From positions 11,469,360-11,533,359 of the forward strand of contig NC_043019.1 of the NCBI RefSeq assembly GCF_006345805.1: a stretch of 64,000 nt of DNA. The letters run 5' to 3'. The notes beneath the pieces are model-generated. The model saw nothing but the letters and a program-made list of their open reading frames with translations, did not search any database and was not told where the DNA came from. Source of the DNA: Octopus sinensis. Taxonomy: Eukaryota. This document shows, piece after piece, positions 24,650-61,532 of this stretch. Within the stretch, counting starts at the first letter, position 1, and every line of letters starts with the position of its first letter. Position numbers and translations under genes: made by a program.

Positions 24650-24780
24650 TTATAGATTTTCGTTATTCAAAAGTCCTGTGGCAAGATTCCTTGGCCGCAG
24701 TCTTCCGTAGAGAATAAAACTAATTGTGGCCAAGAGGACACCCGTCAGCAGCATGCCAATACCCAGTCCAATCATTTGAC
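24650..24780 (-). CDS. Membrane protein gene last exon (TM helix and cytoplasmic tail)
   Basis: ttgttctgtccacag|GT; (G)QMIGLGIGMLLTGVLLATISFILYGRLRPRNLATGLLNNENL*; TAA at 24652-24650 overlaps AATAAA. Confidence 0.92.
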
Positions 24781-25078
24781 CTGTGGACAGAACAAGAAAC
24801 AGACAATTTACTTTGTGTTCGTGTTGTTATTTATCAATATTAACATAATCAGGGACTAACAAGCTTCCTTGATCTGCTACGCTGGGGGAAACATTTATAA
24901 AATTGATTTGCTTGGGGGTGACCTGAAAATAGCAAATGAAGAGACACCCAGAAAAATTTGCAACATACAGATCTAATCATGTGGTTTATTAAATGGGATT
25001 CTCGGAGTTTCAGCAGAGTAAAATATTTGCCTTTCAGTAAATAAATACACATCCCAGTGCTAAAGCATATATTGTGTG

Positions 25079-25602
25079 CCATAAATCCTTGAGTATAGTC
25101 CGCCCTTGAGTATAATATGCAGGGGATTTTTAGGGGGCTGTACCTCTGAAAAACCTAAACCTTGTGTATAATACGCACCCCTTCTTTAGAGAAGGGGTGT
25201 GTATTGAGTCAAGGAGGTCTATATAACATCGTGGTTTCTAAAAATGTATACGGTAATGTCCTTTATTATTATTGTATATATAACATAATGCAAACGTGTA
25301 GCTTTTTTGTGCATTTTGTTTGTAGAAAATAAAGAAATAACAGTAATTACGTTTAATAAATGTTGCTTACTGCAAGTTATGGATGATTCTTTTATGACTT
25401 CATTGCTTTCAGGCTTAGCTTAAGGTATTTTCGCGTCCAACATCACAAAATGCGTCTGAATAAACATTGCTGGACAGCAAATAGAGACTCGGACATTGCT
25501 TAGAAAATATTTTTCATTTTTAACCTCGTATATAGTATGCACTAGGAATTTTGACCGTTAAATTTTGGGGAAAAAATGCGGATTATACTCAAGGATTTAC
25601 GG
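25079..25602. mobile_element. pogo/Tigger-type MITE
   Basis: TIR cc(g/a)taaatccttgagtata(a/g)tccgc at both ends, TA on the right flank. Confidence 0.7.
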
Positions 25603-26632
25603 TAGTTACTATATTTCATACATTTGACACAGTCCAAGGCATAGAAATAAATAATAAATAACATATGATGGATGATGTGACAGAAGGAATGTAACCCAGA
25701 ACAGACAGTATAAGAAATACTACATTACATATTTGCATAACCCTCTAGCATTTAAACTGGCCAAATCCAACCCAGATATCCTACATGTTTTATGTTCAAA
25801 CAGGACATATCTGATCTCTCACATCTACCCTACAATGTCATTCTGAAAAATCAAACACTCACATCATCGAAATCTGAAAGCTACAAGATAATGTGTAATT
25901 AATTTAAAACAATGTGAATTAAAAAAAAGTATTACATTTGATAAAGTAATTTCAGTGCTGTAAGGTTAATCACTCATTGAGGAGAGTAGTGTAGTGCAAG
26001 CATGCTTACAAGAACTTTCTTGACAACCTAATATATATACATACATACATACATACATACATGGTGGCTGCCCCCTCGTTATCGAGTATGGCCATTGCAC
26101 AAAGCTTAATCAATGTTGTTATCATGCAATGCCTGTGCAAGATTTTTTTTAAAGTGAGGAAAGGGTGTGCACTGAGTCAATCCCACTCACTAAGCAACAG
26201 CAGCCATAATCCAAAAAGAAGAACAAGTCAACATCATCGGTAACCACTGAGCCGCAGGTTTTATGTCGGAGTTATCCCAGTTACCCGAGTTACCTCCTCC
26301 TAGAAGGATGCCCTAACAAAGGCTAGGAGTCCTTCACTCCCAGTGGTTTAACCGTGCGATCGGGTATTCAGTCCGATTATTTCTATATCTCCGCGCATGA
26401 TACAGCCTTAAGACATTTATTGGATGGCCGTTGACTCTCAAGAGTTCCTCCGCCCTTTGACGGGTTTTGTTTTTCATCCCACAGGGTGTCCAATAAACAC
26501 CCTCCTCACCAAGCAAGCTTGGTGGGGTTGCCGGTTTAGTCTCCGATGACCCGACCATGCAACAGGTTGTACTGGGTTACATGTTACCAGTAGCACTCGA
26601 AAGTGACCTAACATACATACATACATACATAC

Positions 26633-26698
<66 letters not shown>

Positions 26699-26841
26699 AT
26701 GAATATATACATACCTTCAGAAGTAAGTACAAATTACGTTCATGATGGAAATTTATAAAGGGTCAACAACTGACCAGGATGCACCAAAATCCAATTAGTG
26801 TTGTGAGCTGAGGTAACTGTTCACTTTGTACGATTTCACAA

Positions 26842-26885
<44 letters not shown>

Positions 26886-26895
26886 CACCACCACC

Positions 26896-26939
<44 letters not shown>

Positions 26940-28689
26940 ACCAGTCATCACTATCACTACTACTGCCAGCACACCACCACCACCACCACCACCTTCATCC
27001 GACCACCTTGTTTCCCATCACATTAACTGTAGTGACATGTTAATTTAACTGAGATAATTAAGTTTTTTTTGTTTCTTTTTTTTTTTCGTTCCATACAGTT
27101 TGTGTGTGACTTTACATTTATTTTGCTCTCTTTTGTAAAAGGTCAACAAATATAATTTTGTGATGTGTTCATGCTGTTGTTGTTTAATCTCAGGTCAATC
27201 CCGACCAAAGCACATCTATGTTCTGTGACCATAATCTTTGACCTTACAGTTATTAGTTTTGTTATGTATATTGAACCAATCCTATGACTAGCACCTGGCA
27301 GATGCCAGGGCCCTGGGATGGAGGTACGTAAAAAGCACTATCCGAATTGTGGCCGATGCCAGCGCCGCCTCGACTGGCTTCCGTGTCGGTGGCACATAAA
27401 AAGCACCATCCGAATCGTAGCCGAAGCCAGTGCCGCCTCGACTGGCTTCCATAAAATGCACCATCCGAATTGTGGCCGATGCCAGCGCCGCCTCGACTGG
27501 CTTCCGTGTCGGTGGCACGTAAAAAGCACCATCCGAATCGTAGCCGAAGCCAGTGCCGCCTCGACTGGCTTCCATAAAATGCACCAATCCGACCGTGGCC
27601 GATGCCAGCCTCGCCTGGCACCAGTGCAGGTGGCACGTAAAAAGCACCCACTACACTCACGGAGTGGTTGGCGTTAGGAAGGGCATCCAGCTGTAGAAAC
27701 TTTGCCAGATAAGACCGGAGCCTGGTGCAGCCTTCTGGCTTCCCAGATCCCCCGGTCAAACCGTCCAACCCATGCTAGCATGGAGAACGGACGTTAAACG
27801 ATGATGATGATGATGATGTATGTATGTGTGGTTGTTGTGTGATCTTTGTAAACAAACGGCTCATTCATACAAGCGTTGTTTGTTTCCAGTTCTTTACGTC
27901 AACAGGTCTGGATTATCCATGTTTGATAGACTGGGAGATTATTACCATATTTAATGGGCATATAAGGGGTACATTTCTACAGCTGAGTAAACTGGAGCAA
28001 CGTGAAATAAAGTGTCTTGCTCAAGAACACAACACGCAGCCAGGTCCGGGATTTGAACTCACAACCCCATGGTCATAAGTTTGATGCTCTAACCACTGAG
28101 CCATGTGACTTCACTTGAGCAAGACATTTTATTTCACGTTGCTCCTGTTCACTGAGCTGTAGAAATGAGTTGCGATGTCACTGGTGCCAAGCTGTATCGG
28201 CCCCTTTGCTTTTCCCTTGGATAACATCAGTGACATGGAGTGGGGAGGCTGGTATGCATGGGCGACTCTCTTTACTCTCTTTTACTTGTTTCAGTCATTT
28301 GACTGCGGCCATGCTGGAGCACCGCCTTTAATCGAGCAACTCGAACCCGGGACTTATTCTTTTGTAAGCCCAGTACTTATTCTATCGGTCTCTTTTGCCA
28401 AACCGCTAAGTAACGGGGACATAAACACACCAGCATCAGTTGTCAAGCAATGCTAGTGGGACAAACACAGACACATATATATATATATATATATACACAC
28501 ACATACGACGGGCTTCTTTCAGTTTCCGTCTACCAAATCCACTCACAAGGCTTTGGTCGGCCTGAGGCTATAGTAGAAGACACTTGCCCAAGGTGCCACG
28601 CAGTGGGACTGAACCCGGAACCATGTGGTTGGTAAACAAGCTACTTACCACACAGCCACTCCTGCTGGTCTTCTATAAACAACCTTGTG

Positions 28690-28830
28690 ATCACTAGAGA
28701 TGGCAATGATATGCTTCCATTCATCTTCCCACACAGCCTCAAACTCAACATGGAGACCAACATCAAATACCTGGAAGAGGAAGTGTTGCCTTGGGTCAAG
28801 AGGGCGGTTGCTGGAAGACCCTACATCTGA
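28690..28830 (+). mobile_element. Tc1/mariner-superfamily DDE transposase remnant
   Basis: GNDMLPFIFPHSLKLNMETNIKYLEEEVLPWVKRAVAGRPYI, typical of the segment before the QQDxAP motif. Confidence 0.6.
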
Positions 28831-29262
28831 GCATGGCTTAGTCACGTGGCTTAGTGTTTAGGGTGTTGGGTTCATGATCGTAAGATTGTGGTTTCGATTC
28901 CTGGACCAGGTGACATGTTGCGTTCTTAAGCAAAACACTTGATTTCTCGTTGCTCCGGTCCACTCACCTGGCAAAAATTAGTTACCCTGCGACAGACCCG
29001 AGTCCCATCCAGGTAAGATTTTATACACCATGGAAATGGAAACTATGAAACTGGTCCTTATGAGTCAGCATGACTCAAAAGAGTAACATTTACCTGTATT
29101 TTAAATTTAAACTGAAAATTGAACACAATAGAACAATGTATTTCACCTGACGCTCCACCGATCCTTCCTCTCGTTCTCACCCTCTCTACCCTCTTCTTTC
29201 TCCATCCACCCTAATGAAAAAAAAAACAAAAAAAAAACAAACAGAATTTCATATAAACTTAC

Positions 29263-29443
29263 CAGTTGTATATCCAGTTCTACCATTTGCTTTTAATGAT
29301 GATGATGATGATGTTGGGGATATTGAGGATGACGAGTATAATGATGGTAATGATGATGATGATGATGATGTTTTTGCTTTTATTGTTGTTGTTGTTGTTG
29401 TTGTGGTCTGTTGCTCTGCGAATGTTGCTTCAAAAGTATGTTG
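29263..29443 (-). CDS. Membrane protein gene exon (Ser/Thr-rich stalk)
   Basis: (t)n gcag|CAA...ACTG|GTAAGT; QHTFEATFAEQQTTTTTTTTIKAKTSSSSSS...GRTGYTT; 181 nt, phase 0 to 1. Confidence 0.88.
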
Positions 29444-29793
29444 CTGCAAAAAAAAAAAAATACAAAAGTTAAATGTCTATTCTTTTATTTGTTTCGGTCA
29501 TTTGACTACAGCCATGCTGGAGCACCACCCTCCAAAAGGATTTTAGTTGAAGAAATCGACCCCTTATTCTATAGGTCTCTGTTGCCAGACTGTTAAGTTA
29601 CGGGGATGTAAACACACCAACATTGGTTGTCAAGCAATGGTGGGGGAGGGGGAAACACAGACACAAAGACAGGTATGTTTTGATTATCTCACCCCCATTA
29701 AAACATTGGGTTATCTCCCCTATCTAAAAAAATTACTCAACTCTCAATAAAAAAGATATATATATATATATAGAGAGAGGGGGAGAAAGAGAA

Positions 29794-29874
<81 letters not shown>

Positions 29875-30257
29875 AAGAGAGAGGGAGAGAGAGAAAGAAA
29901 GAGAAAGAGAGAGAGAAAGAGAGGAGAATGAGAGAGAGAAAGGGAGAGGGAGAGAGAGAGAGAAAGAGAGAGAGAGAAAGAGAGAGGGAGAAAGAGAGGA
30001 GAGAGAGAAGAGGAGGGAGAGAGAAAGAGAAAGAGAGAAAGAGAAAGAATGAGAGAGAGAGAGAAAGAGAGAGGGAGAGAGAGAGAGAGAAAGAGAGAGA
30101 GAGAAAGAGAGAGGGAGAAAGAGAAAGAGAGAGGGAGAGAGAGAAAGAGAAAGAGAGAGAGAGGGAGAGAGAGAGAGAAAGAGAGAGAGAGAAAGAGAAA
30201 GAGAGAGGGAGAGAGAGAGAAAGAGAGAAAGAGAGAGGGAGAGAGAGAGAGAAAGAA

Positions 30258-30307
<50 letters not shown>

Positions 30308-30332
30308 TAATTGGTTATGAATCAATAATTAC

Positions 30333-30509
30333 CTTATTTTCCAAATCTGTTAAAGTGATTTGGAAACCTTTGTACTTGAGTCTGTCAATAATATTCTTGT
30401 AAGCTTCGTCCAGTCCAGTTTCCTCAATTGGTTCTTTAGTTTGGTCTTTCACCGGTGCTTTGTCCAGCAGCATCGCCGTGATGTATATGCCATCTTCGAG
30501 AAAGTCAAT
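30333..30509 (-). CDS. Membrane protein gene exon (membrane-proximal domain)
   Basis: gtatttctctag|ATT...AAG|GTAATT; IDFLEDGIYITAMLLDKAP...KGFQITLTDLENK; 177 nt, phase 0-0. Confidence 0.9.
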
Positions 30510-31312: not shown

Positions 31313-31353
<41 letters not shown>

Positions 31354-31916: not shown

Positions 31917-31953
<37 letters not shown>

Positions 31954-36197: not shown

Positions 36198-36307
36198 CTG
36201 AATATCTGAAATTCGAAGAGCTGATACACCAGAATATCCCTGGATGGAGACAATTAAAGCATGTTTGAATTGCTTTTGATTAACGCTGATGAGATCCGAG
36301 AGAGAGC
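36198..36307 (-). CDS. Membrane protein gene exon (membrane-proximal domain)
   Basis: ttctctttatctag|GC...CAG|GTAAGA; (S)SLSDLISVNQKQFKHALIVSIQGYSGVSALRISDIQ; 110 nt, phase 1 to 0. Confidence 0.9.
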
Positions 36308-36398: not shown

Positions 36399-37784
36399 AC
36401 TTAAAAAGCGGCATAGAGAGAGAGAGGTAGGTAAAGATAAAGAATCAAAATAGATCAACATCAATGGAAATCGTAACTGTGATACCAGTGCCGGTGGCAC
36501 ATAAGAGAACCGTCCGAATGTGGTCATTGCTAGCGCCACCCCGACTGCCTCTGTGCCAGTGGAATGTAAAAAGCACCATCCGATCGTGGCCGTTTGCCAG
36601 CCTCGCCTGGCCTCCATGCTGGTGGCACGTAAAAAGCACCATCCGATCGTGGCCGTTTGCCAGCCTCGCCTGGCCTCCATGCTGGTGGCACGTAAAAAGC
36701 ACCATCCGATCGTGGCCGTTTGCCAGACTTGTCTGGCACCTGTGCAGGTGGCACGTAAAAAGCACCATCCAATTGTGGCCGTTTGCCAGCCTCGCCTGGC
36801 ACGTAAAAAGTACCCACTACACTCATGGAGTGGTTGGCGTTAGGAAGGGCATCCAGTTGTAGAAACATTGCCAGATCAGACTGGGCCTGGTGCAGCCTTC
36901 TGACTTCCCAGACCCCCAGTTGAACCGTCCAACCCATGCCAGCATGGAAAGCGGATGCTAAATGATGATGATGATGATGATGAATGAAGAGGAAGAGAAA
37001 GAATCAGCATAGAAAGAGATATAGAGGAAAAAAGAAAATGAGAAAGACTTGTGAGTGATTGATTGATGATTGATTGATGATAGGTAGATAGATAGATGGA
37101 TGGATGTTGCATGTTCACTCATGGAAATAATACAATAAACAAACTTTTAAAATAACAGTGAAACTTTATTCCTCCGTTTAATAGTATACTCTTTTTTACT
37201 CTTTTACTTGTTTCAGTCATTTGACTGCGGCCATGCTGGAGCACCACCTTTAATCGAGCAACTCGACCCCGGGACTTATTCTTTTGCAAGCCCAGTACTT
37301 ATTCTATCGGTCTCTTTTGCCGAACCGCTAAGTAACGGGGACATAAACACATCAGCATCAGTTGTCAAGCAATGCTAGGGGGACAAACACACACACACAT
37401 ACATATATATATACATACATATATACGACAGGCTTCTTTCAGTTTCCGTCTACCAAATCCACTCACAAGGCATGGGTCGGCCTGGGGCTATAGCAGAAGA
37501 CACTAGCCCAAGATGCCACGCAGTGGGACTGAACCCGGAACCATGTGGTTGGTTAGCAAGCTACCTACCACACAGCCACTCCTGCGCCTATAGTGGACCA
37601 TTATCTTAATTTTGCTCTGGTGAATGACAGCAGGAAAATAACATGACTTGCCTTCATAAAATTGCTCACCCTTCTGCTCATAGAAGATTTGATACACCAA
37701 TTTATAGGAGGGTACGCTCCAGAGCACATTCAGATGAGATTTCTGAGAATGTATTATGTGCAACGTAACTAAATTTTCATTACT

Positions 37785-39058
37785 CAACCAGTTGGATCTT
37801 CTATATTTGATCAATTGGATCTTTGATACTCAACCAATTGGATCTTTGATACTGAACCAAGTGGATTTTTGATACTCAAGTCATTGGATCTTTGATACTC
37901 AAGTAATTGGATCTTTGATACTCGACCAATTGGATCTTTGATACTGAACCAATTGGATCTTTGATACTCAACCAATTGAATCTTTGATACTCAACCAATT
38001 GGATCTTTGATACTCAACCAATTGGATCTTTGATACTCAAATAATTGGATCTTTGATACTCAACCAATTGGATCTTTGATACTGAACCAATTGGATCTTT
38101 GATACTCAAATAATTGGATCTTTGATACTCAACCAATTGGATCTTTGATACTCAACCAATTGGATCTTTGATACTGAACCAAGTGGATTTTTGATACTCA
38201 AGTCATTGGATCTTTGATACTCAAGTAATTGGATCTTTGATACTCAACCAATTGGATCTTTGATACTCAACCAATTGGATCTTTGATACTCAACCAATTG
38301 GATCTTTGATACTCAAATAATTGGATCTTTGATACTCAGCCAATTGGATCTTTGATACTCAACCAATTGGATCTTTGATACTCAACCAATTGAATCTTTG
38401 ATACTCAACCAATTGGATCTTTGATACTGAACCAAGTGGATTTTTGATACTCAAGTCATTGGATCTTTGATACTCAAGTAATTGGATCATTGATACTCAA
38501 CCAATTGGATCTTTGATACTGAACCAATTGGATCTTTGATACTCAACCAATTGAATCTTTGATACTCAACCAATTGGATCTTTGATACTCAACCAATTGG
38601 ATCTTTGATACTCAACCAATTGGATCTTTGATACTCAACCAAGTGGATTTTTGATACTCAAGTCATTGGATCTTTGATACTCAAGTCATTGGATCTTTGA
38701 TACTCAAGTAATTGGATCTTTGATACTCAATCAATTAGATCTTTGATACTCAACCAATTGGATCTTTGATACTCGACCAATTGGATCTTTGATACTCGAC
38801 CAATTGGATCTTTGATACTCAACCAAATGGATCTTTGATACTCAACCAAATGGATCTTTGATACTCAACCAAATGGATCTTTGATACTCAACCAAATGGA
38901 TCTTTGATACTCAACCAGTTGGATCTTTGATGCTCAACCAAGTGGATTTTTGATACTCAAGTCACTGGATCTTTGATACTCAAGTAATTGGGCCTTCAAT
39001 ACTCACCCAATTGGATCTTTGATACTCAACCACTTGGATCTTTGATACTCAACCAATA
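37785..39058. repeat. 23-bp minisatellite, about 55 copies
   Basis: Unit caattggatctttgatactcaac, with recurring variant blocks. Confidence 0.95.
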
Positions 39059-39410: not shown

Positions 39411-39534
39411 TTGGTACCTTAAAGGAAATCTGCTTCTGCTTAGTTCCTGGGAAACATGTGGCTATGTTGAACTCCCAAACATCGGGCTCCTTTTCTTCAT
39501 ATCCGTACACATTGTATGTTATGTGTACACTTTG
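39411..39534 (-). CDS. Membrane protein gene exon (repeat 2, end)
   Basis: ttatttattcag|CAA...CCAA|GTAAGT; QSVHITYNVYGYEEKEPDVWEFNIATCFPGTKQKQISFKVP; 124 nt, phase 0 to 1. Confidence 0.9.
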
Positions 39535-40525: not shown

Positions 40526-40600
40526 CTCTGGTATCATCATCTCATACATTACTAGCCAGGAGGATTTAGCATTCGCCTCACCCACCTCTGTGGTCTCTTC
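40526..40600 (-). CDS. Membrane protein gene exon
   Basis: tatatttttag|GAA...GAG|GTAAGT; EETTEVGEANAKSSWLVMYEMMIPE; 75 nt, phase 0-0. Confidence 0.82.
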
Positions 40601-40740: not shown

Positions 40741-41301
40741 GATGATGATGATGATGGTGATGATGATGGTGATGATGATGGTGATGATGATGGTGATGAT
40801 GATGATGATGGTGATGATGATGGTGATGATGATGGTGATGATGATGATGAGGGTGGTGATGATGATGGTGATGATGATGATGATGATGATGATGGTGATG
40901 ATGATGGTGATGGTGGTGGTGGTTGTGGTGGTGGTGGTGGTGGTGGTGGTGGCAATAATAATGATAATGGTTTCAAATTTGGCACAGGGGCTGCCATTTT
41001 AGGGGATTGGACGACCCCAGTGTTTCACTGGTACTTGATTTATTGACCCCGAAAAAAAATGAAAGGCAAAGTCGACCTCGGCGGAATTTGAACTCAGAAC
41101 ATAACGGCAGACGAAATACGGCTGCGCATTTCGCCCGGCGTGCTAACGTTTCTGCCAGCTCACCGATGATGATGATGATAATGGTGGTGGTGGTGGTGGT
41201 GGAAATGATGATAATGGTGGTATTGATAATCGTGATACTGGTTATGATGCTTGTGGTGATGATGATAATGATGGCGATGGCAGTGCTAATGATCATGATG
41301 A

Positions 41302-41780
41302 ACATACAGCATCTCGAAAGAGTCCAGAAGCTGGCTACCTGCATGGTTCATGGTCTCAAAAATTTGTCTTATGAAGAAAGGCTGAGGACGCTCGACCGTT
41401 ATTCTCTAGAAAAACGCCGCCGCCGTGGTGATCTCATTCTCGCTCACAACTTCATAAGCGGAAAGTGTAACCTCTCAAAAGAGCTGTTCTTCACTCCTGC
41501 TCCAGAGCGTCGGCTGCGGGGTCATTCCGAAAAGCCTCTACCTGCGATGATTTCATCTCAATCGAAGGAGAGGAGCTTTCTCCGTCCGGGTTGCGGATCT
41601 GTGGAACAAGCTGCTGGACGAGATAATGAAGATGCCGACGACCGCTTTGTTCAAAGCCTCCCTGGACCTCAAGTGGCCTGAACTCTTTACATGAACACCA
41701 TCCTGTACTTAACTCCATGTCCCCCTACATGGCCTTGCTATTTGCTTTTGAGCCAAAAATTAACTAACTAACTAACTAAC
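41302..41780 (+). mobile_element. CR1-clade LINE 3' fragment
   Basis: IQHLERVQKLAT...LSYEERLRTL..YSLEKRRRRGDLI...LRGHS, followed by a (TAAC)n tail. Confidence 0.85.
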
Positions 41781-41830: not shown

Positions 41831-41920
41831 CGAAGCAAAATAATATCTCCATATAGATTCTTCACCCGCAACGTCACCAGTAGCCGTCCATACATCACAA
41901 TTAATTCCTCGAGCATCTCT
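41831..41920 (-). CDS. Membrane protein gene exon (repeat 2)
   Basis: aaatatttcag|AGA...TCG|GTAATT; RDARGINCDVWTATGDVAGEESIWRYYFAS; 90 nt, phase 0-0. Confidence 0.9.
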
Positions 41921-42797: not shown

Positions 42798-43235
42798 GGA
42801 GGAGGAGGAGGAGGAGGAGGAGGAGAAGGATGCTTATGATGGTATATAACAGGCTTCTTTCAGTTTCTGTGTACCAAATCAACCCACAAAGCTTTTGCCA
42901 GCCTAATTCTACAGTAGGAGATACTTGTCCAGAGTGTCGCACAATGGGATTGAACCTGTAACCATGTGGTTGGGAAGCAAAGTAAAAAGAAAAAATGTAG
43001 TTTGTATTTTGTTTCTGCTTTTCGGGGTGGGAGCAAAATTTCAATAGAAATGGATTGTTCTGATGATGATGATGATGATGATGGTAGTGGTGGTGGTGGT
43101 GGTGGTTGTGCCTAGAGTAGAAAAGAATACATGGAGCAGCTCGTGTGTTGAGGAAAGTGTTGCATCTTCTAAGCTGCGGAATGGAGCTGTGATGTAACAG
43201 AAACAAACCAGGAGAAGAGAGGATAACAACAACAT

Positions 43236-44120
43236 GTGATTGCTGTGGCAGATGTTATTGAGGTGACAGATATGATTGATGTGATCGCTGTGACAGATGT
43301 TACTGAAGTGACAGATGTGACTGGTGTGACAAATGTTATTGGGGTGACAGATGTGATTGATGTGACAAATGTTATTGAGGTGACAGATATGATTGATGTG
43401 ATCACTGTGACAGATGTCACTGAAGTGACAGATGTGACTGGTGTGACAAATGTTATTGGGGTGACAGATGTGATCGCTGTGACAGATATTACTGAAGTGA
43501 CAGATGTGACAAAAGTTATTGGGGTGACAGATGTGATTGATGTGATCACTGTGACAGAGGTTACTGAAGTGACAGATGTGACAAATGTTATTGGGATGAC
43601 AGATGTGATTGATGTGATCGCTGTGACAGATGTTACTGAAGTGACAAATGTGACTGGTTTGACAAATGTTATTGGTGTGACTGATGTGATTGCTGTGACA
43701 GATATGATTGATGTGATCACTGTGACAGATGTCACTGAAGTGACAGATGTGACTGGTGTGACAAATGTTATTGGGGTGACAGATGTTATTGATGTGATCG
43801 CTGTGACAGATGTTACTGAAGTGACAGATGTGACAAAAGTTATTGGGGTGACAGATGTGATTGATGTGATCACTGTGACAGAGGTTACTGAAGTGACAGA
43901 TGTGACAAATGTTATTGGGATGACAGATGTGATTGATGTGATCGCTGTGACAGATGTTACTGAAGTGACAGATGTGACTGGTGTGACAAATGTTATTGGG
44001 GTGACTGATGTGATTGCTGTGACAGATGTTACTGAAGTGACAGATGTGACAGAGGTTATTGGGGTGACAGATGTGATTGATGTGACAGACATGATTGGTG
44101 TGGCAGATGTGGTTGGATAG
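43236..44120. repeat. 9-bp-based minisatellite (gtgacagat variants) with higher-order repeats
   Basis: Direct inspection; stop-free in at least three reading frames. Confidence 0.92.
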
Positions 44121-44135: not shown

Positions 44136-44302
44136 CTTTCCTTCATACATAAAATCTGTTGAATTAAAAACATAGAAGTAACGCGAATTAACCATCTTCA
44201 CTGTCTTGATGCCATTAACGGAGCTGATGTGGACATCAGGTTCAGCTTCGGTCATTATATGCATGGCACATTCTCCAGATGAATCTATTTTGTAGCCAAC
44301 AC
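44136..44302 (-). CDS. Membrane protein gene exon (repeat 2)
   Basis: cttcaccactgccag|GT...AAG|GTGAGG; (G)VGYKIDSSGEC...YFYVFNSTDFMYEGK; 167 nt, phase 1 to 0. Confidence 0.9.
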
Positions 44303-46018: not shown

Positions 46019-46109
46019 CTGTATGGAAGTCCTGTACCTCAGTTATTGTCTTGCCAGATGGTGTGTGGAATTCAAATTTAACTCTCTTGGTTTTATAGTC
46101 ATACAATTC
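46019..46109 (-). CDS. Membrane protein gene exon (repeat 2)
   Basis: ttttcccttacag|GAA...ACAG|GTAAGG; ELYDYKTKRVKFEFHTPSGKTITEVQDFHT; 91 nt, phase 0 to 1. Confidence 0.9.
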
Positions 46110-51637: not shown

Positions 51638-51659
51638 GCATACATATATATCTATATAT

Positions 51660-52760
51660 ATATATCATCACCATCATCATCATCATCGTTTAACGTCTGG
51701 GGGCACTGGCATCAACTATATTCAGATGGTGCATTTTACGTGCCACTGGCACAGATGCCAGTCGGGGGCACTGGCCACAACTACAATTTTGGTTTTATTT
51801 GATTAACAGGACTTCTCAAGCACATATCGCCCAACGCATCAAGAATACTTTTAAAAGGGCTGGACATGCAACACTGGCATTGCCCATAGCTGCGATCTCA
51901 CTTTAGTTGCCAGGTCTTCTCAATCACAGCATATCTCCAACATTCAAAGATCATGCTTCACTACCTCATCCTATGTCTTCCTGGGTCTACTTCTTCCACA
52001 GTTAGGGTGTGGCACTTCTTCACACAGCTGACCTCATCCATACATAACACATGAACATACCAGCACAGTCGTCTCTCTTGCACATCACATTTGATGCTTC
52101 TTATGTCCAACTTTTCTCTCAGGGCGCTTACACTGTCATGTATGCACATTGACATTACACATCCAGCAGATCATACTAGCTTCATTTCTTTCAAGCCTAT
52201 GCATGTCCTCAGCAATCATGGCTCATGTTTCACTGCTGTGTAGCATAGCAGTTCGCACACATGCATTACACAGTCTACCTTTCATCCTGAGCATGAGGCC
52301 CTTAGCTGCCAGCAGAGGTAGGAGCTCCATGAACTTTGCCCAGGCTATTCTTATTCTAGCCACAACACTTTCAGAACAACCACCCCCACTACAGACTTGG
52401 TCACCTAGATAGAAGAAGTCATCAACTACTTCTAGTTTCTCCCAGTGGCATCTGATGTAATCTGTTTTCTGTACACCTTTAGTGTTTATTGCCCCTGTGC
52501 ATCTGCCACACACGAAAACTATCTTCTCGGTTAACCTTTCTTTGATATTGCTGCACCTTTTACGTGTCCACAGCTTACACTGGGTACATCGTATGGAGTT
52601 TCTACCCATGCCTTTTCTACAGATCAAGAAGGGCCATCTACCTGAGGGGGCTTGTAATTTGTCAGCCTTCCTACTTACTAAGAATTTGGCTTTTCTATGA
52701 AGAGACATCACTGACACAAGGAGGAGAAAGTAGGAGGAACAATGGAAAAAGAAGAACAAA
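51660..52760 (-). mobile_element. RTE-clade LINE fragment
   Basis: CRKGMGRNSIRCTQCKLW...LEVVDDFFYLGD...RIRIAWAKF...ML(H)SSET; (GAT)n tail at about 51665. Confidence 0.85.
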
Positions 52761-52808: not shown

Positions 52809-52925
52809 ATCAAAATATGTTGTTTCGCGTGACTGTCTGATTATCAGTTCAGTCTTGAGTTTAAAGAAATCTGGAAGTATAGGAATGCTTGTGCCATTTC
52901 TCTGGCATGCAACTCCGGGTGGCGG
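52809..52925 (-). CDS. Membrane protein gene exon (linker, repeat 2 start)
   Basis: attcatttttcag|CCG...GAT|GTAAGT; PPPGVACQRNGTSIPILPDFFKLKTELIIRQSRETTYFD; 117 nt, phase 0-0. Confidence 0.9.
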
Positions 52926-54529: not shown

Positions 54530-54560
<31 letters not shown>

Positions 54561-56527: not shown

Positions 56528-57009
56528 GGATCTTTTCGGTTTGAACAGCAATTTTTAACATAATTTCTAGGTAACTAAAAAACTTATATCTAGGCATGCC
56601 TAGAATAAGGATGGGATCTTTTCGGTTTGAACGGCAGTTTTTAATAATGATTTCCACGTAACTAAAAAGTTTTAAACTTCGTATACTGGTAGAATGTGTT
56701 TATTGAGAAAATTCTATAGTTTCTAAGATATTTGTTTTTTTTTCTTTAATTTCTGCAATTTCAACCAATCACTGACGTCTATTGAGGTAAAAAGCATTCT
56801 GTGCTGTATGAATATGTCCCTCGTTTAAGAAACAGATCGGGTTTATTTACATTTGTGAATAAAAAAAGATACCCTTCCCCCCACCCCTAACCCTAACCCT
56901 AACCCTAAAATAGATTGAAATGCAATAGATCGATACTAGGGTCATAATTATGGGTGACAATTTCATATGACACCGCTAGAAAAAACTGCGGTTCAAACCG
57001 AAAAGATCC
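56528..57009. mobile_element. Non-autonomous TIR element with duplicated left end and internal (CCCTAA)4
   Basis: ggatcttttcggtttgaac(a/g)gca at 56528 and 56614; inverse ...gcggttcaaaccgaaaagatcc ending 57009. A related fragment lies at about 12600-12720. Confidence 0.6.
56885..56908 (-). repeat. Interstitial telomere-type repeat (TTAGGG)4
   Basis: ccctaa x4 inside the TIR element. Confidence 0.8.
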
Positions 57010-57095
57010 ATAAAGATATGTGATGTAGAAAGTGTGGATAATTTTTTACTTCCCTTCATATATATGGAAGAAAAACTAATGATGTATGCTGGTAC

Positions 57096-57235
57096 CTGAA
57101 ATTTATCCTTCCTGTTGTAAATGACAGAATTGAAGTCAGAATAGTCAATAACCGTTTGGGGGACAGTCTTACTCTCCAGGGATAACCTAACCAGCACCTG
57201 AGGCAGTTTACTCACTGTACTCCATGAAGTGCTGT
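57096..57235 (-). CDS. Membrane protein gene exon (repeat 1, end)
   Basis: tttattttgcag|AC...CAG|GTACCA; (D)STSWSTVSKLPQVLVRL...DYSDF...DKFQ; 140 nt, phase 1 to 0. Confidence 0.87.
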
Positions 57236-57339
57236 CTGCAAAATAAAAAGAAAGACCAGAGATTACATTCAAACAAATCATTAGACATGAAAGCCATCCA
57301 TATACATTATCATTTTTCATCTCTGTACATGGCTTGTAT

Positions 57340-57600
57340 AGCTCTCACCAACTACTCGGCTATCCCTAGCTTCTGCACTGACCGCCAGATAAGGGAGCAG
57401 GGTACTCTGTCAAAGGCTTTCTTCATGTCGACAAAAGCCAGGTATAAAAGCTTATTTTTGGCTAGATATTTCTCCTGCAGTTGTCTAACTAGGAATATAG
57501 CATCAGTCATGCTCCTGCCTGGTACAAATCCAAACTGCATCTCATCTACATTAACTCTCTTCCCAATTAATTGAGTTATGATCCTTTCTGTGACTTCTTC
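57340..57600 (-). mobile_element. RTE reverse transcriptase fragment
   Basis: QFGFVPGRSMTDAIFLVRQLQEKY...LYLAFVDMKKAFDRVP (RT motifs). Confidence 0.88.
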
Positions 57601-58007
57601 TGTACATATGGAGGGCAGAAGGGGGACCTCATTTCTTTGGGTACAACACCTGCACCCATAATGACCCTAAAGATGGCACTGATCATGGATGTGCATGATC
57701 AGAGTTAAGCTGGGAGTAAACTTAGACTTAGGTCTCTAATAAAACCTGGGACTCATAAGACCAGAGTACGAGGAACTGAAACACTAGTTTGTTGGAGGAT
57801 TAAGATCTCCACTATTGTTGGAACTCATTTACAGCCAAATGAATTGGAGCAGCATGAAATGAAGGGTCCTGCTCAAGAACATAATGCACTATCCATTCTG
57901 GGAATTGAAATCACAATCATGCTTTCATGAGTGCAATACCCTAACCACAAGGCCATGGGCTAAACTACAAAAACAACAAAAAAAAAAGAAAATTTTTTTG
58001 AATAAAT

Positions 58008-58430
58008 AGGCGCAGGAGTGGCTGTGTGGTAAGTAGCTTGTTTACCAACCACATGGTTCCGGGTTCAGTCCCACTGCGTGGCACCTTGGGTTAGTGTCTT
58101 CTACTATAGCCTCGGGCCGACCAAAGCCTTGTGAGTGGATTTGGTAGATGGAAACTGAAAGAAGCCCGTCGTATATATGTATATATGTATATATATGCGT
58201 GTGTGCGTGTTTGTGTGTCTGTGTTTGTACCCCTAGCATTGCTTGACAACCGATGCTGGTGTGTTTATGTCCCCGTTACTTAGCGGTTCGGCAAAAAGAG
58301 ACCGATAGAATAAGTACTGGGCTTACAAAAAAGAATAAGTCCCGGGGTCGAGCTGCTCGATTAAAGGCGGTGCTCCAGCATGGCCGCAGTCAAATGACTG
58401 AAACAAGTAAAAGAGTAAAAGAGTAAAGAG
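58008..58430 (+). mobile_element. tRNA-derived SINE, family A (representative copy)
   Basis: A box TGGCTGTGTGG, B box GGTTCAGTCCC, central (TA)n, 3' (TAAAAGAG)n tail. Other copies: + at about 290, 1581, 2528, 30879, 40087, 45503, 46145, 49872; - at about 21195-21590, 28265-28663, 37190-37590. Confidence 0.85.
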
Positions 58431-58445
58431 TAAAATAGTAAATAC

Positions 58446-58688
58446 CAGTAAAAGACACATTAACGGACACCACTTCATCAGTGTCTATCAGTTTCTTAGT
58501 TGACCAGGTTTTGCATTTAATTCCCCGGATAGTTGAGCGACCCAAGAAGGTATAATCATAGTCACCATTCATCATAAGAGAGGCAGATGGCGATGCTATG
58601 TCAATTAGGCCTCCCTTCTTCAATGTGAAATCACTGTCGAACCGTTTTGGAGAAACCGTCAGATTGAAGTCCACAGGACACACACTTG
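58446..58688 (-). CDS. Membrane protein gene exon (repeat 1)
   Basis: ctctgctttcag|CA...ACTG|GTATTT; (T)SVCPVDF...[17 protein letters not shown]...VNVSFT; 243 nt, phase 1-1. Confidence 0.88.
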
Positions 58689-58859
58689 CTGAAAGCAGAG
58701 AAAAATGAAGAAGAATGATCACAATGATTATGATGGTGAGGAGGAGGAGAAAACAATGAGAGGGGGAGAGAGAAGAGAGAGAGGAGAGTGATAGAGAGAG
58801 AGAGAGAGAGAGAGACAGATGGATGGACAGACAGGCAGGCAGGCAGATAGATAGATAGA

Positions 58860-58931
58860 CAAACAGACAGATAGATTGATAGATTAATAGATAGATTGAT
58901 AGATAGATAGATAGATAAATGGATAGATAGG

Positions 58932-58991
<60 letters not shown>

Positions 58992-58993
58992 AG

Positions 58994-59030
<37 letters not shown>

Positions 59031-59033
59031 ATG

Positions 59034-59130
<97 letters not shown>

Positions 59131-59132
59131 AG

Positions 59133-59166
<34 letters not shown>

Positions 59167-59168
59167 AG

Positions 59169-59217
<49 letters not shown>

Positions 59218-59220
59218 ATG

Positions 59221-59309
<89 letters not shown>

Positions 59310-59311
59310 AG

Positions 59312-59352
<41 letters not shown>

Positions 59353-59355
59353 ATG

Positions 59356-59393
<38 letters not shown>

Positions 59394-59400
59394 AGATAGA
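58860..59400. repeat. Long (ATAG)n microsatellite (representative of many)
   Basis: Other long tracts: (TAA)n 925-1055 and 39540-39960; (TAC/CAC/TGC)n 24155-24470; GA-rich 29770-30300; (GAAA)n 35940-36135; (GAT/GGT)n 40640-40950; (TACA)n 54160-54565; many (TA)n. Confidence 0.97.
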
Positions 59401-59697
59401 TAGGCATGGACATGGCTGTGTGTTGTGTTCTTGAGCAAGACACTTTATTTCACGTTGCTCCAGTTCACTCAGCTGTAGAAATGGGTTGCGACATTACAGG
59501 TGCCAAGCTGTAGTGATGGAGATCAAGAATAGATGACAACTGTAGAGTTTGGGTAGGGTTGTAGGGTGGACATAATGAACAGTAGTAGATAAAGGGTGAG
59601 GTGGGGACAAGGGGTGACAGACAGACAGAGACAGAAAAACGCTGGAAAACAGAAAGAATATAAGAGGGAAAAAATCTTTGAAAATAAGCAAGCTTAC

Positions 59698-59913
59698 TTC
59701 TTGTTTTTAACTTCATTTCCACCTTAACGAACATATTGTGAATAAAATCAAAGAGAGATTCAAACACCCACTCTTTATTCGAACGCCATATTGACATCAT
59801 ATGCACATCATGGTCGTAATATTTCATATAGTTTCCCAACTTGGTTTTGCCATATTCAGTTTCTTCAACTCGCAAAGAATATGTTGTTGGCACTGTAAAG
59901 CTAAATGGTATTC
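59698..59913 (-). CDS. Membrane protein gene exon (repeat 1, start)
   Basis: ttttatttcccag|GA...AGAA|GTAAGC; (G)IPFSFTVPTTYSLRVEE...YYDHD...VEMKLKTR; 216 nt, phase 1-1. Confidence 0.9.
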
Positions 59914-59985
59914 CTGGGAAATAAAAGAGAAAGTGATAAATCAAATCAGGACCATGTGGTGTATGTGTGTGGCTGGGTGTACAAG

Positions 59986-60477
59986 TACATGACATGCATA
60001 AGATCTGGTCATTAAATCTAAGTAGAGACTTCAAACTTGAAATCTTCAAAGCCACAGTCGAACCAATTCTACTATATGGCTCAGAAACCTGGACGTTATC
60101 AAAGAAGCTTGAGAGGCAGTTGGATGGAACCTACACTCGCCTCCTTATGAGAGCTCAAAATCTCTCGTGGAAGTGTCATCCAACCAAAATGCAAATATAT
60201 GGGAAACTACCACCTGTGTCATCTCTTGTGAAAGGTAGGAGAATCCAGTTTGCTGGACATTGTTGTAGAGCTGAAAAAGAGGTAATTTCTACTCTCCTCC
60301 TCTGGAAGCCATCTACTCGCAATATCAGAGGGCGCACACTCTCCTACCCTGATGTAATCTCCAGGGATACAGGCATCCAGCAACAGGACCTCCGTAATGC
60401 CATGATGGACTGTGAAGTCTAGCGTAGCATGGTAAATTCCATTGTCTCGACCATGGTCGAACAATAATGATGATGAT
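59986..60477 (+). mobile_element. LINE 3' fragment with 11-bp TSD
   Basis: FKATVEPILLYGSETWTL...RRIQFAGHC. TSD gggtgtacaag at 59975-59985 and 60478-60488. A second copy lies at about 7150-7420. Confidence 0.85.
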
Positions 60478-60810
60478 GGGTGTACAAGAAATAAAGGTTT
60501 TCTTACAATAGGGTACCCTATGATAAGGGTACTTATACATTTCTGTAAGGGTACCTTACAGGTTCTCTTTTGTAAGAGCATCATGTGGTGTATGTGGCTG
60601 GGTGTACAAGAAATAAAGGTTTTTCTTACAATAGGGTACCCTATGATAAGGGTACTTATACATTTCTATAAGGGTACCTTACAGGTTCTCTTTTGTAAGA
60701 GCATCATGTGGTGTATTTGTGAGGCAGGGTGTACAAGAAATAAAGGTTTTCTTACAATAGGGTACCCTATGATAAGGGTACTTATACATTTCTATAAGTG
60801 TACCTTACAG
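60478..60810. repeat. Tandem repeat of about 122-127 bp, three copies
   Basis: Units start at 60478, 60600 and 60727; a partial unit lies at 59953-59985. Confidence 0.85.
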
Positions 60811-61453
60811 CACCAGTACTGATTCTGCTGTGATAGATAGGTCTTCTTGAGTACAACAAGGGACCAAATATCTCAGCCCTTAGCCATTTCCTTCGTAAGG
60901 GTCAGTGTCTAGAGATCAGTCTTCATTACTTCATCCCTTGGCTTCCTGGGTCTCCCACTTTCATAAGTTCCATCCACTTTAAGTAATTGGCTCTTCTATA
61001 TGCAACTGTCTGTATCCATACATAATGTTTACATTTAATTCCAGAGGGTGGCAGAAAGACAGAAATAGCAACTGGTGGTGGTGGTGGTGGTGGTGACAGT
61101 GATGATGATAGTTGTGGTGGTGGTGGGGGCGGTCATGGCGGCGGCAGCAGCAGTGGAGATGGTAATGATGATAGTAGTCCTAATGGTGTTAGTGGCAGTA
61201 GTGGTTGTAGAAGTAGTGGCAGGAGTAGTGACAGTGGTAGTGGTGGTGGTGGTGGTGGTGTTGGCAATTGTGATGGTGGTAGTGGCAGTGTTAGTGACAG
61301 CGATGGTGATGATGACGATGATGATGATGATGATGATAATTATGATGGTAATGGTTGTTGTGATGGTGATCGCTGTGGTGGTGGTGGTGGTGGTAGTGCT
61401 TCAGTACGATGGTCATTGCATGATGTAAACTGAGGCGAATGGATTTCACTTAC

Positions 61454-61532
61454 CTTTCTCTGCTTCAGTGACATCACAGAGAAGAACAACAAGCAGCAGA
61501 GACACAGGAAAGAAACGACTTCTTTTCAAGAC
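61454..61532 (-). CDS. Membrane protein gene: signal-peptide exon
   Basis: gcattcccag|GTC...AAAG|GTAAGT; VLKRSRFFPVSLLLVVLLCDVTEAEK, phase 0 to 1. No in-frame ATG inside the exon. Confidence 0.8.

What the first reader, a model, noticed from the sequence alone, without database searches (positions are those of the whole stretch)
24650..61532. Hidden 14-exon gene for a type I membrane protein with two ependymin/LolA-like repeats
Seen: small exons scattered over 37 kb of repeats join in phase into 646 aa. The two internal repeats align by eye: repeat 1 YYD...C...[17 protein letters not shown]...VSFT...DYSDF...FQPPPGVAC; repeat 2 LYDY...EVQDFHTGVGYKIDSSGEC...FMYEGKRDARGINCDVW...YYF...YNVYGY...FNIATC. 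There are four N-glycosylation sequons (NLT, NVS, NGT, NST), a 23-aa TM followed by basic residues, and a short tail. Known: the G..T.RGI.C..W plus F..P..C pattern recalls ependymin-related (EPDR)/LolA-fold lipid-binding proteins. Inference: a membrane-anchored, tandem-domain lipid-binding or lysosomal/surface receptor of unknown function. The ORF track shows only fragments of it.
Basis: partly seen in the sequence, partly recalled or inferred. Interest (0 to 1): 0.75.

Follow-up and report, generated by a model that had tools for sequence, protein, structure and literature searches.

The report
Octopus membrane protein, two ependymin-like domains
The scattered exons are a real octopus gene that public databases already list, coding for a membrane-anchored protein with two ependymin/LolA-like pockets; its family is old and widespread in invertebrates, and nobody has studied what it does.

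Summary
The window is Octopus sinensis chromosome CM016881.1. All 13 introns are GT-AG. The "missing" ATG exon is a 6-nt ATGCAG exon inside the window at 63836-63831.

The interpretation also holds.
- The two halves are homologous (profile-profile E=1e-24).
- An AlphaFold2 model (pLDDT 78.6) matches EPDR1, the sponge EPD-BCP1, LolA, VioE and RseB in Foldseek (E about 1e-6, target TM 0.55-0.63).
- By sequence it is not a member of Pfam Ependymin. It belongs to the Pfam pair LolA_2nd_metazoa (PF25898) + DUF7959 (PF25899).

The family has about 300 clusters at 50% identity. Thirty sampled clusters gave molluscs, an annelid, a nemertean, a brachiopod, a shrimp, a millipede and a sponge. All named members are "uncharacterized". 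I found no literature on the family.

Most likely it is a membrane-tethered, probably cell-surface, binder of hydrophobic ligands. That function is inferred, not shown. The gene and its domains are already in databases, so interest is modest.

The parts
63831..63836 (-). First coding exon: ATG CAG (Met-Gln), followed by the donor GTTAGT
   Evidence: Pattern found. The annotated CDS start L001:10001 maps to window 63836.
61454..61532 (-). Exon encoding the signal peptide (VLKRSRFFPVSLLLVVLLCDVTEAEKG). An alternative in-frame ATG lies at 61568.
   Evidence: acceptor ...ttgcattcccag|GTC. Hydropathy 1.69 at residues 9-27.
59698..59913 (-). Exon, aa 29-100: N-terminal strands of LolA/EPDR-like domain 1
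58446..58688 (-). Exon, aa 101-181: domain 1 core, with invariant C104, the RGIKCKTW motif and sequons NLT and NVS
   Evidence: Non-octopus family members hit this exon in tblastn.
57096..57235 (-). Exon, aa 182-228: C-terminal strands of domain 1
52809..52925 (-). Exon, aa 229-267: holds the end of domain 1 (PPPGVAC, invariant C235), sequon NGT and the start of domain 2 (IPILPDFF...YFD). The domain junction lies inside one exon.
46019..46109 (-). Exon, aa 268-297: domain 2 (ELYDYKTKRVKF...DFHTG)
44136..44302 (-). Exon, aa 298-353: domain 2, with invariant C309 and sequon NST
41831..41920 (-). Exon, aa 354-383: domain 2 motif RDARGINCDVW
40526..40600 (-). Exon, aa 384-408: domain 2
39411..39534 (-). 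Exon, aa 409-449: end of domain 2 (FNIATC, invariant C435) and first strand of domain 3
   Evidence: It takes 33 tblastn hits from non-octopus homologues.
36198..36307 (-). Exon, aa 450-486: DUF7959 alpha/beta domain (helices and the SALRISDIQ strand)
30333..30509 (-). Exon, aa 487-545: second half of the DUF7959 domain
29263..29443 (-). Exon, aa 546-605: Ser/Thr-rich (52%) mucin-like stalk
   Evidence: pLDDT is below 50 here.
24650..24780 (-). Last coding exon, aa 606-648: TM helix (MIGLGIGMLLTGVLLATISFILY), 18-aa cytoplasmic tail and the TAA stop
   Evidence: Helix 605-632 in the model. The TM motif is conserved across the family.

Best explanation
This is an intact protein-coding gene of Octopus sinensis that is already annotated as NCBI LOC115223621. 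It has 15 coding exons over 39.2 kb on the minus strand, and its introns are full of simple repeats and transposon fragments.

It encodes a 648-aa type I membrane glycoprotein with these parts:
- a signal peptide;
- two tandem beta-clam domains of the LolA/ependymin-related fold (about aa 30-237 and 240-450), each holding one invariant cysteine pair (C104/C235 and C309/C435);
- a small alpha/beta domain (DUF7959, about aa 441-541);
- a Ser/Thr-rich stalk, probably O-glycosylated;
- one TM helix with a conserved small-residue (GxxxG-like) motif;
- a short, unconserved cytoplasmic tail.

It belongs to an old invertebrate family (Pfam LolA_2nd_metazoa + DUF7959). That family is a distant sister of the secreted ependymin-related proteins.

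Shown here: the gene model, the duplication, the family and its architecture, and the predicted fold.

Inferred: by analogy with EPDR1, LolA, LprG and the sponge carotenoprotein, each clam domain offers a hydrophobic pocket. The protein would hold two such pockets on a stalk above the membrane, most likely at the cell surface, to bind or hand over a lipid or other hydrophobic ligand. The two domains in one chain may stand in for the EPDR1 homodimer. The conserved TM motif suggests further self-association or a membrane partner.
For: Gene model.
- The spliced exons match P0001 exactly, with 13 GT-AG introns.
- The annotated CDS range maps onto the window.
- In the O. bimaculoides orthologue, exons 1-11 are colinear with the same splice boundaries and an open frame. 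Nucleotide identity is 92.9% and dN/dS is 0.48.
- Non-octopus homologues hit seven of the exons in tblastn.

Family.
- Precomputed Pfam hits PF25898 and PF25899 lie on this very protein.
- There are 300 clusters at E<=1e-3 and 172 at E<=1e-10.
- The architecture d1-d2-d3 plus a C-terminal TM is found in 95 of 175 sequences.
- Homologues sit as complete 640-710-aa ORFs on 2.0-2.7-kb contigs, which means spliced mRNAs.

Duplication: hhalign of d1 against d2 gives probability 99.6% and E=1e-24. The junction lies inside exon 5.

Fold.
- AlphaFold2 mean pLDDT is 78.6 and pTM 0.67, with the domains at 82-93.
- Foldseek hits EPDR1 (6jl9, 6e7o, 6e8n, 6jla, 6jld), EPD-BCP1 (8i34), LolA (4mxt, 9azz), VioE and RseB at E 1e-6 to 1e-4, with target TM 0.5-0.63.
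- Weak Ependymin hits recur in 8 of 34 members.

Other features.
- C104, C235, C309 and C435 are invariant in 132-138 of 138 sequences.
- The TM motif is present in 131 of 137 sequences.

Ligand-binding analogy: the LolA superfamily shares a hydrophobic pocket, and EPDR1 is a dimer with two grooves on one face (PMC6363788).
Against: - No ligand, localisation or expression data exist for any member.
- I could not read the model's coordinates, so pocket hydrophobicity, disulfide geometry and the d1-d2 interface are unchecked.
- Sequence links to EPDR are below threshold: there is no Pfam Ependymin hit for the octopus protein, others reach at most 17 bits against a cutoff of 32.3, and hhalign against human EPDR1 gives E=0.04 and 0.17.
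- A dN/dS of 0.48 is rather relaxed for a housekeeping function.
- Octopus domain 1 has lost the 'WxSC' cysteine that 129 of 138 members keep.
- LolA-fold proteins are not all lipid binders: VioE is an enzyme and RseB binds a protein.
Confidence: 0.6

Rival explanations
1. [quoted passage not shown]
For: - EPDR1 structures are the best single-domain Foldseek hits.
- Sub-threshold PF00811 hits recur in 8 of 34 members.
- hhalign puts YD..N.R and F/Y.ID...C in register with human EPDR1.
- The invariant pair C104/C235 looks like the EPDR beta6-to-C-terminal-loop disulfide (PMC6363788).
- The octopus tail has a YGRL motif.
Against: - No Pfam Ependymin hit reaches the gathering score.
- A profile search of PDB sequences does not find EPDR1.
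- EPDRs are secreted single-domain proteins of about 213 aa and are reported absent from ecdysozoans (PMC6280359). This family has a TM anchor and occurs in shrimp and a millipede.
- YxxPhi is present in only 8 of 137 tails.
- The domain junction lies within one exon, so this is not a recent fusion of neighbouring genes.
Confidence: 0.15
2. The fold is right but the job is not lipid handling. The ectodomain is a cell-surface receptor or adhesion molecule, or a pigment (carotenoid) or protein binder, that uses the clam domains as recognition modules.
For: - LolA-fold proteins include a carotenoprotein (8i34, PMC10470211), an enzyme (VioE) and a protein-binding sensor (RseB).
- A mucin stalk plus a conserved TM motif is typical of surface receptors.
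- Evolution is fairly fast (dN/dS 0.48) and paralogues are many, as in recognition families.
Against: - The cytoplasmic tails are short (median 20 aa) and unconserved, so direct signalling is unlikely.
- Nothing here tells ligand classes apart.
Confidence: 0.2
3. The model is a prediction artefact or a decaying pseudogene: unrelated open frames chained through repeats.
For: - The exons are small and make up about 5% of a repeat-rich 39-kb span.
- The automated models of the two sister species are visibly wrong. The O. vulgaris model reads through an intronic repeat and skips exons, and the O. bimaculoides model stops after exon 11.
Against: - All 13 introns are canonical and the frame is open throughout.
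- Orthologous exons and boundaries are conserved with dN/dS below 1.
- Distant homologues from other phyla match the same exons and share the full architecture on mRNA-sized contigs.
Confidence: 0.03

Closest known systems
Pfam LolA_2nd_metazoa (PF25898) + DUF7959 (PF25899) proteins, named 'LolA-like domain-containing protein' in UniRef (for example Biomphalaria pfeifferi A0AAD8F9M9, Amphimedon A0A1X7UZY4, Magallana gigas K1R990)
   Same: This is the family the gene belongs to. It shares the same two clam domains, DUF7959 domain, stalk, TM motif and four invariant cysteines.
   Different: Octopus domain 1 lacks the 'WxSC' cysteine kept by 129 of 138 members and instead has C159. It shares only 19-26% identity with the non-cephalopod members of the family alignment.
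EPDR1 / ependymin-related proteins (Pfam Ependymin PF00811; PDB 6E7O, 6E8N, 6JLD, 6JLA, 6JL9)
   Same: - Predicted beta-clam fold.
- Signal peptide and N-glycosylation.
- A cysteine pair that ties the C-terminal loop to the sheet.
- The motifs YD..N.R, F/Y.ID...C and F.(T/P)P...C.
- Two pockets per functional unit: a homodimer in EPDR1, two domains in one chain here.
   Different: - No sequence-level membership.
- Tandem domains in one chain, plus an extra DUF7959 domain, a mucin stalk and a TM anchor, against a soluble protein of about 200 aa.
- Present in ecdysozoans, where EPDRs are reported absent (PMC6280359).
Bacterial LolA/LolB/LprG/RseB and VioE (LolA fold superfamily, CATH 2.50.20)
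   Same: Same fold class by Foldseek (4mxt, 9azz, 9c89, 8cm1, 2zf3/4, 2v42). The superfamily shares a hydrophobic pocket (PMC6363788).
   Different: No detectable sequence similarity. The bacterial proteins have no disulfides, no glycosylation and no TM anchor, and act in the periplasm or cytosol.
Sponge blue carotenoprotein EPD-BCP1 (PDB 8I34)
   Same: An invertebrate EPDR-fold protein with a proven hydrophobic (carotenoid) ligand. It ranks fourth in Foldseek (PMC10470211).
   Different: Soluble, single-domain and a true Ependymin-family member. There is no evidence that the octopus protein binds pigment.

Membership tests
LolA_2nd_metazoa / DUF7959 family (PF25898 + PF25899) | Pfam HMM hits on the protein | tested here: met
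   Precomputed hits to both families on P0001, which is identical to the window's product. The local Pfam-A scan returned neither family for this protein, so this rests on the precomputed table.
LolA_2nd_metazoa / DUF7959 family (PF25898 + PF25899) | Significant full-length sequence similarity to other members | tested here: met
   phmmer: 172 clusters at E<=1e-10, many aligned over residues of about 30-630.
LolA_2nd_metazoa / DUF7959 family (PF25898 + PF25899) | Architecture: signal peptide, d1, d2, d3, stalk, TM, short tail | tested here: met
   d1-d2-d3 plus a C-terminal TM in 95 of 175 sequences, and in the octopus protein.
LolA_2nd_metazoa / DUF7959 family (PF25898 + PF25899) | Four invariant cysteines (one pair per clam domain) | tested here: met
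   C104, C235, C309 and C435 are present. They are invariant in 132-138 of 138 sequences. Pairing was not checked in 3D.
Ependymin / EPDR (PF00811) | Pfam Ependymin HMM above the gathering score (32.3 bits) | tested here: not met
   No hit for the octopus protein. The best relative reaches E=9.5e-4, one shown hit scores 17 bits, and the matches cover only profile positions 8-39.
Ependymin / EPDR (PF00811) | LolA-type beta-clam fold | tested here: met
   AlphaFold2 model plus Foldseek: EPDR1 chains at E 1.5e-6 to 9e-5, probability 1.00, target TM 0.52-0.63. This is a predicted structure, not a solved one.
Ependymin / EPDR (PF00811) | Secreted single-domain protein of about 200 aa with the conserved EPDR cysteine profile (positions 23, 94, 186 +/- 148; PMC6280359) | tested here: not met
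   The protein is 648 aa, has tandem domains and is TM-anchored. Only the 94/186-like pair is clearly present in each octopus domain.
Ependymin / EPDR (PF00811) | Homodimer with two lipid grooves on one face; lysosomal or secreted location | not testable with these tools
Bacterial LolA/LolB | Sequence membership and a periplasmic lipoprotein-carrier role | tested here: not met
   Fold-level similarity only. There are no sequence hits in PDB or Pfam, and the gene is eukaryotic and spliced.
SEA domain (tested for domain 3) | SEA-type alpha/beta sandwich next to the membrane | tested here: inconclusive
   Domain 3 alone folds with pLDDT 91 as beta-alpha-alpha-beta-beta-alpha. Foldseek finds nothing below E=0.045, and only generic ferredoxin-like folds, with no SEA entry among the top 50. 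Profile searches of PDB sequences and Pfam are empty.
LAMP-like lysosomal membrane glycoproteins | Conserved tyrosine (YxxPhi) or dileucine sorting motif in a short tail | tested here: not met
   Octopus has YGRL at the TM boundary, but YxxPhi occurs in only 8 of 137 family tails and an acidic dileucine in 2 of 137.

The most novel reading that the evidence does not exclude
This family is a separate, ancient animal branch of the LolA/EPDR superfamily, found from sponge to protostomes and not seen in deuterostomes among the 30 clusters sampled. In it, two clam domains in one chain form a built-in EPDR1-like pseudo-dimer held on a glycosylated stalk. It would act as a membrane-tethered lipid or glycolipid extractor, sensor or transfer device at the cell surface, a role not described for any LolA-fold protein in animals.
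Probability: 0.3. Interest if true: 0.5.

Novelty: already known. Interest (0 to 1): 0.27.

Why it matters
For the genome scan, this is a positive control. A by-eye exon assembly through 37 kb of repeats reproduced the curated pipeline's model to the base, and it is better than the deposited models of two sister species.

Biologically, the gene is one member of a large, entirely unstudied invertebrate family. The family ties the ependymin/LolA lipid-binding fold to the membrane as a tandem pair.

The ependymin literature treats multi-domain models as annotation errors and reports no EPDRs in ecdysozoans. This sister family shows that genuine tandem, membrane-anchored versions exist and that they reach crustaceans and myriapods. 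That gives people who work on EPDR1, whose own function is still unsettled, a natural comparison set.

The gene and its domains are already in public databases and nothing here reveals a function, so the value is modest.

Tried and rejected
Searches that found nothing useful.
1. A local Pfam-A scan of the protein and of a draft model gave no real hit. The two relevant families showed up only in the precomputed tables.
2. Two of the three word-index homologue searches were unproductive. The full-length alignment was swamped by low-complexity words and returned only the three octopus proteins. The domain-2 profile returned two snail proteins. The taxonomic spread therefore rests on 30 clusters looked up by hand, and absence from deuterostomes is not established.
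3. Sequence searches of PDB with the protein, the domain-2 profile and the domain-3 profile found nothing meaningful. The autolysin repeat hits at E=0.016 are chance.
4. Four literature searches for the family, its Pfam accessions or gene identifiers returned nothing relevant.

Ideas tested and dropped.
5. hhalign of the domain profiles against a single human EPDR1 sequence (checked against 6e7o_A) was not significant, at E=0.039 and 0.17. It supports the motif register only.
6. SEA-like identity for domain 3 is not supported by Foldseek.
7. Lysosomal sorting through the YGRL tail motif is not conserved in the family.
8. A third, interdomain disulfide between C159 and C361 is unlikely. These positions are mostly V/A/T or only partly Cys, and they do not co-vary.
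9. There are no paralogous copies elsewhere in the window.
10. Intron flanks are also 77-95% identical between the two octopus species. Exon-versus-intron conservation is therefore uninformative at this distance, and I used dN/dS instead.


Full report
**What the window is.** The sequence is animal DNA with about 40% GC and many micro- and minisatellites. All exons of the finding are 100% identical to the NCBI protein [quoted passage not shown] (P0001, 648 aa). An exact look-up of that protein returns assembly GCA_006345805.1, chromosome CM016881.1. A direct string match places the window at 11,469,360-11,533,359 of that record.

**Checking the observation.** I searched all AG/GT-bounded exon combinations around the tblastn hits for one that translates to P0001. 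Exactly one solution exists.

| Exon | Window coordinates (minus strand) |
|---|---|
| 1 | 61535/61532-61454 |
| 2 | 59913-59698 |
| 3 | 58688-58446 |
| 4 | 57235-57096 |
| 5 | 52925-52809 |
| 6 | 46109-46019 |
| 7 | 44302-44136 |
| 8 | 41920-41831 |
| 9 | 40600-40526 |
| 10 | 39534-39411 |
| 11 | 36307-36198 |
| 12 | 30509-30333 |
| 13 | 29443-29263 |
| 14 | 24780-24650 |

- Every intron begins with GT and ends with a pyrimidine tract plus AG.
- From 61532 the exons sum to 1941 nt, which is 646 codons plus TAA.
- The only correction concerns the start. NCBI's protein begins MQ|VLK, and the two missing codons are a tiny exon, ATGCAG|GTTAGT, at window 63836-63831. The ATG exon is therefore inside the window.
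- An in-frame ATG at 61568, used by the O. vulgaris model, is a possible alternative start.

**Is it a real gene?**
- In O. bimaculoides, exons 1-11 lie in the same order with the same AG/GT boundaries and an open frame. They are 92.9% identical in nucleotides, with dS=0.127, dN=0.061 and dN/dS=0.48. That is purifying selection, though not a strong one.
- Homologues from other phyla hit seven of the exons in tblastn.
- Homologues in oyster, shrimp and other animals occur as complete 640-710-aa ORFs on 2.0-2.7-kb contigs, the size of spliced mRNAs.
- The artefact or pseudogene reading can be set aside.
The O. vulgaris model skips exons 3-4 and reads through an in-frame intronic minisatellite. 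The O. bimaculoides model ends after exon 11.

**The internal repeat.** BLASTP between the halves sees only the RGIxCxxW region (E=6e-4). I built an alignment of 34 family members (A1) and compared the profile of residues 30-238 with that of 239-450. This gave probability 99.6% and E=1e-24 over 184 columns.
- YYD with LYD
- C104 with C309
- RGIKCKTW with RGINCDVW
- FQPPPGVAC with FNIATC

The junction between the two domains lies inside exon 5 (aa 229-267). The tandem arrangement therefore cannot come from merging two neighbouring genes, which the ependymin literature warns about for multi-domain models (PMC6280359).

**The family.**
- A full HMMER scan of 1.84 billion representatives finds 300 clusters at E<=1e-3, 172 at E<=1e-10 and 39 at E<=1e-30.
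- I looked up thirty clusters by hand. They come from gastropods, bivalves, a chiton, the annelid Owenia, the nemertean Lineus, the brachiopod Lingula, penaeid shrimps, a millipede and the sponge Amphimedon.
- Every name is "uncharacterized", "hypothetical" or, in UniRef, "LolA-like domain-containing protein".
- The precomputed Pfam hits on this protein are PF25898 (LolA_2nd_metazoa) and PF25899 (DUF7959).
- The architecture d1-d2-d3 plus a C-terminal TM holds in 95 of 175 sequences. Longer proteins carry extra copies.
- C104, C235, C309 and C435 are invariant in 132-138 of 138 sequences.
- A fifth cysteine ("WxSC" in domain 1) is kept by 129 of 138 members but is missing in octopus. Octopus instead has C159, a position that is usually Val.
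- I found no paper on the family.

**The fold.**
- AlphaFold2 on A1 gives mean pLDDT 78.6 and pTM 0.67. The two beta-rich domains score 82-93. The signal peptide, stalk and tail score low.
- Apart from a poorly superposed multi-domain PNGase, the best Foldseek hits against the PDB are frog, human and mouse EPDR1, sponge EPD-BCP1, LolA, VioE, RseB/MucB and LolB. These have E from 1.5e-6 to 3e-4, probability 1.00 and target TM-scores of about 0.5-0.63.
- By sequence the link to ependymins stays below threshold:
  - There is no Pfam Ependymin hit for the octopus protein.
  - Eight of 34 members hit Ependymin weakly (best E=9.5e-4; 17 bits against a cutoff of 32.3; profile positions 8-39 only).
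  - EPDR1 does not appear in a profile search of PDB sequences.
  - hhalign against human EPDR1 gives E=0.039 and 0.17.
- Those weak alignments do put YD..N.R and F/Y.ID...C in register with EPDR1. This makes C104/C309 the likely counterpart of EPDR1 C113, and C235/C435 the counterpart of C210. That pair is described as the most conserved EPDR disulfide (PMC6363788). The equivalence is an inference.
It is a member of the sister family LolA_2nd_metazoa, not of Pfam Ependymin.

1. A third domain, DUF7959 (about aa 441-541). On its own it folds with pLDDT 91 as beta-alpha-alpha-beta-beta-alpha. Foldseek finds only generic ferredoxin-like sandwiches, with a best E of 0.045 and no SEA entry in the top 50. 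My SEA-like guess is therefore unsupported.
2. A 60-residue stalk with 52% Ser/Thr, encoded by exon 13.
3. A TM helix whose N-terminal half, G.MAGLG.GM...G, is conserved across phyla. A GxxxG-like pattern occurs in 131 of 137 sequences.
4. Cytoplasmic tails that are short (median 20 aa) and unconserved. YxxPhi appears in only 8 of 137 tails, so the octopus YGRL is not a family feature and lysosomal targeting has no support.

**How it most likely works.**

Shown here:
- a secretory-pathway type I protein that displays two homologous beta-clam domains plus a small alpha/beta domain on a probably O-glycosylated stalk.

Inferred:
- The unifying property of the LolA superfamily is a hydrophobic pocket in the curved sheet, and EPDR1 presents two such grooves on one face of a homodimer (PMC6363788). 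From this I infer that each domain binds a hydrophobic ligand.
- The tandem pair may replace the EPDR1 dimer.
- The conserved TM motif may mediate self-association or contact with a membrane partner.
- The stalk and the lack of sorting motifs point to the cell surface.

Confidence is about 0.97 for the gene, about 0.9 for the fold and family, and about 0.4-0.5 for hydrophobic-ligand binding. The 0.6 I give for the whole statement blends these. Other ligand classes (carotenoid as in 8I34, or protein as in RseB) are not excluded.

**Novelty and score.** The exact protein, its gene model and its domain assignments are already public, so I file it as already known. What is not known is any function for the whole family. 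The family's existence also qualifies two statements in the EPDR literature: that EPDR-like proteins are absent from ecdysozoans, and that multi-domain models are artefacts. That gives modest specialist interest (0.27).

**Surroundings.**
- The downstream neighbour on the same strand is WASH complex subunit 1 (WAHD domain, E=2.4e-52).
- Upstream and outside the window lies a head-to-head 573-aa paralogue with the same Pfam pair.
- The introns carry minisatellites, a SINE-like element in at least nine copies and LINE fragments.

Noticed in passing
window 15517-16041 (-) and 10337-11017 (-): The downstream neighbour on the same strand is WASH complex subunit 1. The first ORF matches the Pfam WAHD domain (E=2.4e-52). 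The second ORF has a poly-proline tract and a VCA-like C-terminus (LMASIRAAGG...KLKNVKE, acidic/Gly end). NCBI lists a 477-aa product starting at window 16041.
   Followed up: partly
window 43234-44111 (intron after exon 7): A 9-bp-based minisatellite with 72/117-bp higher-order units stays open in the exon's frame for about 400 codons (HICH.../NICH... repeats). The O. vulgaris gene model P0003, misnamed 'EF-hand domain-containing D1', reads through its counterpart and also skips exons 3-4. That is an annotation error in the sister species.
   Followed up: partly
L001:1-1833 (-), about 8 kb beyond window position 64000: A head-to-head paralogue (573-aa product, with the same PF25898 + PF25899 hits) lies just upstream of the gene, outside the window. 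This suggests local duplication of the family in octopus.
   Followed up: no
L001:8887-8892 (about 1.1 kb beyond window position 64000) versus window 63831-63836: The 6-nt ATGCAG first coding exon and its surrounding sequence (ACAATTATGCAGGTTAGTGG) occur twice, 1,114 bp apart. NCBI annotates both as alternative first exons that give the same protein.
   Followed up: partly
window 61594-62697: A 184-bp tandem repeat (5.9 copies, 92% matches) fills much of the intron between the ATG mini-exon and the signal-peptide exon.
   Followed up: no
window 37781-39057: A 23-bp minisatellite (55 copies, 90% matches) lies in the intron between exons 10 and 11. Read on the minus strand it gives open frames with repeats such as 'VEYQRSNWLSIKDPIG'.
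   Followed up: no
window 1947, 2923, 28289, 34362, 37211, 45880, 46516, 50298, 58403 (both strands): At least nine copies of a SINE-like interspersed element, recognisable by the pseudo-peptide F[QD]SFDCG[HR]AGAPP, usually next to a (TA/CA)n tail. One copy abuts the 3' end of exon 3 and another the 3' end of exon 6.
   Followed up: partly
window 52223-52759 (-), 59967-60422 (+), 41007-41681 (+): Long ORFs in introns look like retrotransposon fragments: a Cys-rich zinc-finger-like stretch, and 'LLYGSETWTL'-type reverse-transcriptase C-terminal regions. I did not test them against any library.
   Followed up: no
L003 (O. bimaculoides CM046623.1:11,970,675-12,016,480): The O. bimaculoides orthologue model (P0002, 496 aa) ends by reading into the intron after exon 11. 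The fetched locus ends before exons 12-14 (second half of DUF7959, stalk, TM) would be expected, so I could not tell whether they exist there.
   Followed up: no
protein residues 21, 159 and the 'WxSC' column (window exons 61454-61532 and 58446-58688): In about 90% of the 34 aligned family members a Cys aligns with octopus C21, which in octopus sits in the signal-peptide hydrophobic core. The likely partner Cys ('WxSC') is missing in octopus. The cephalopod lineage may have lost one of the two domain-1 disulfides.
   Followed up: partly
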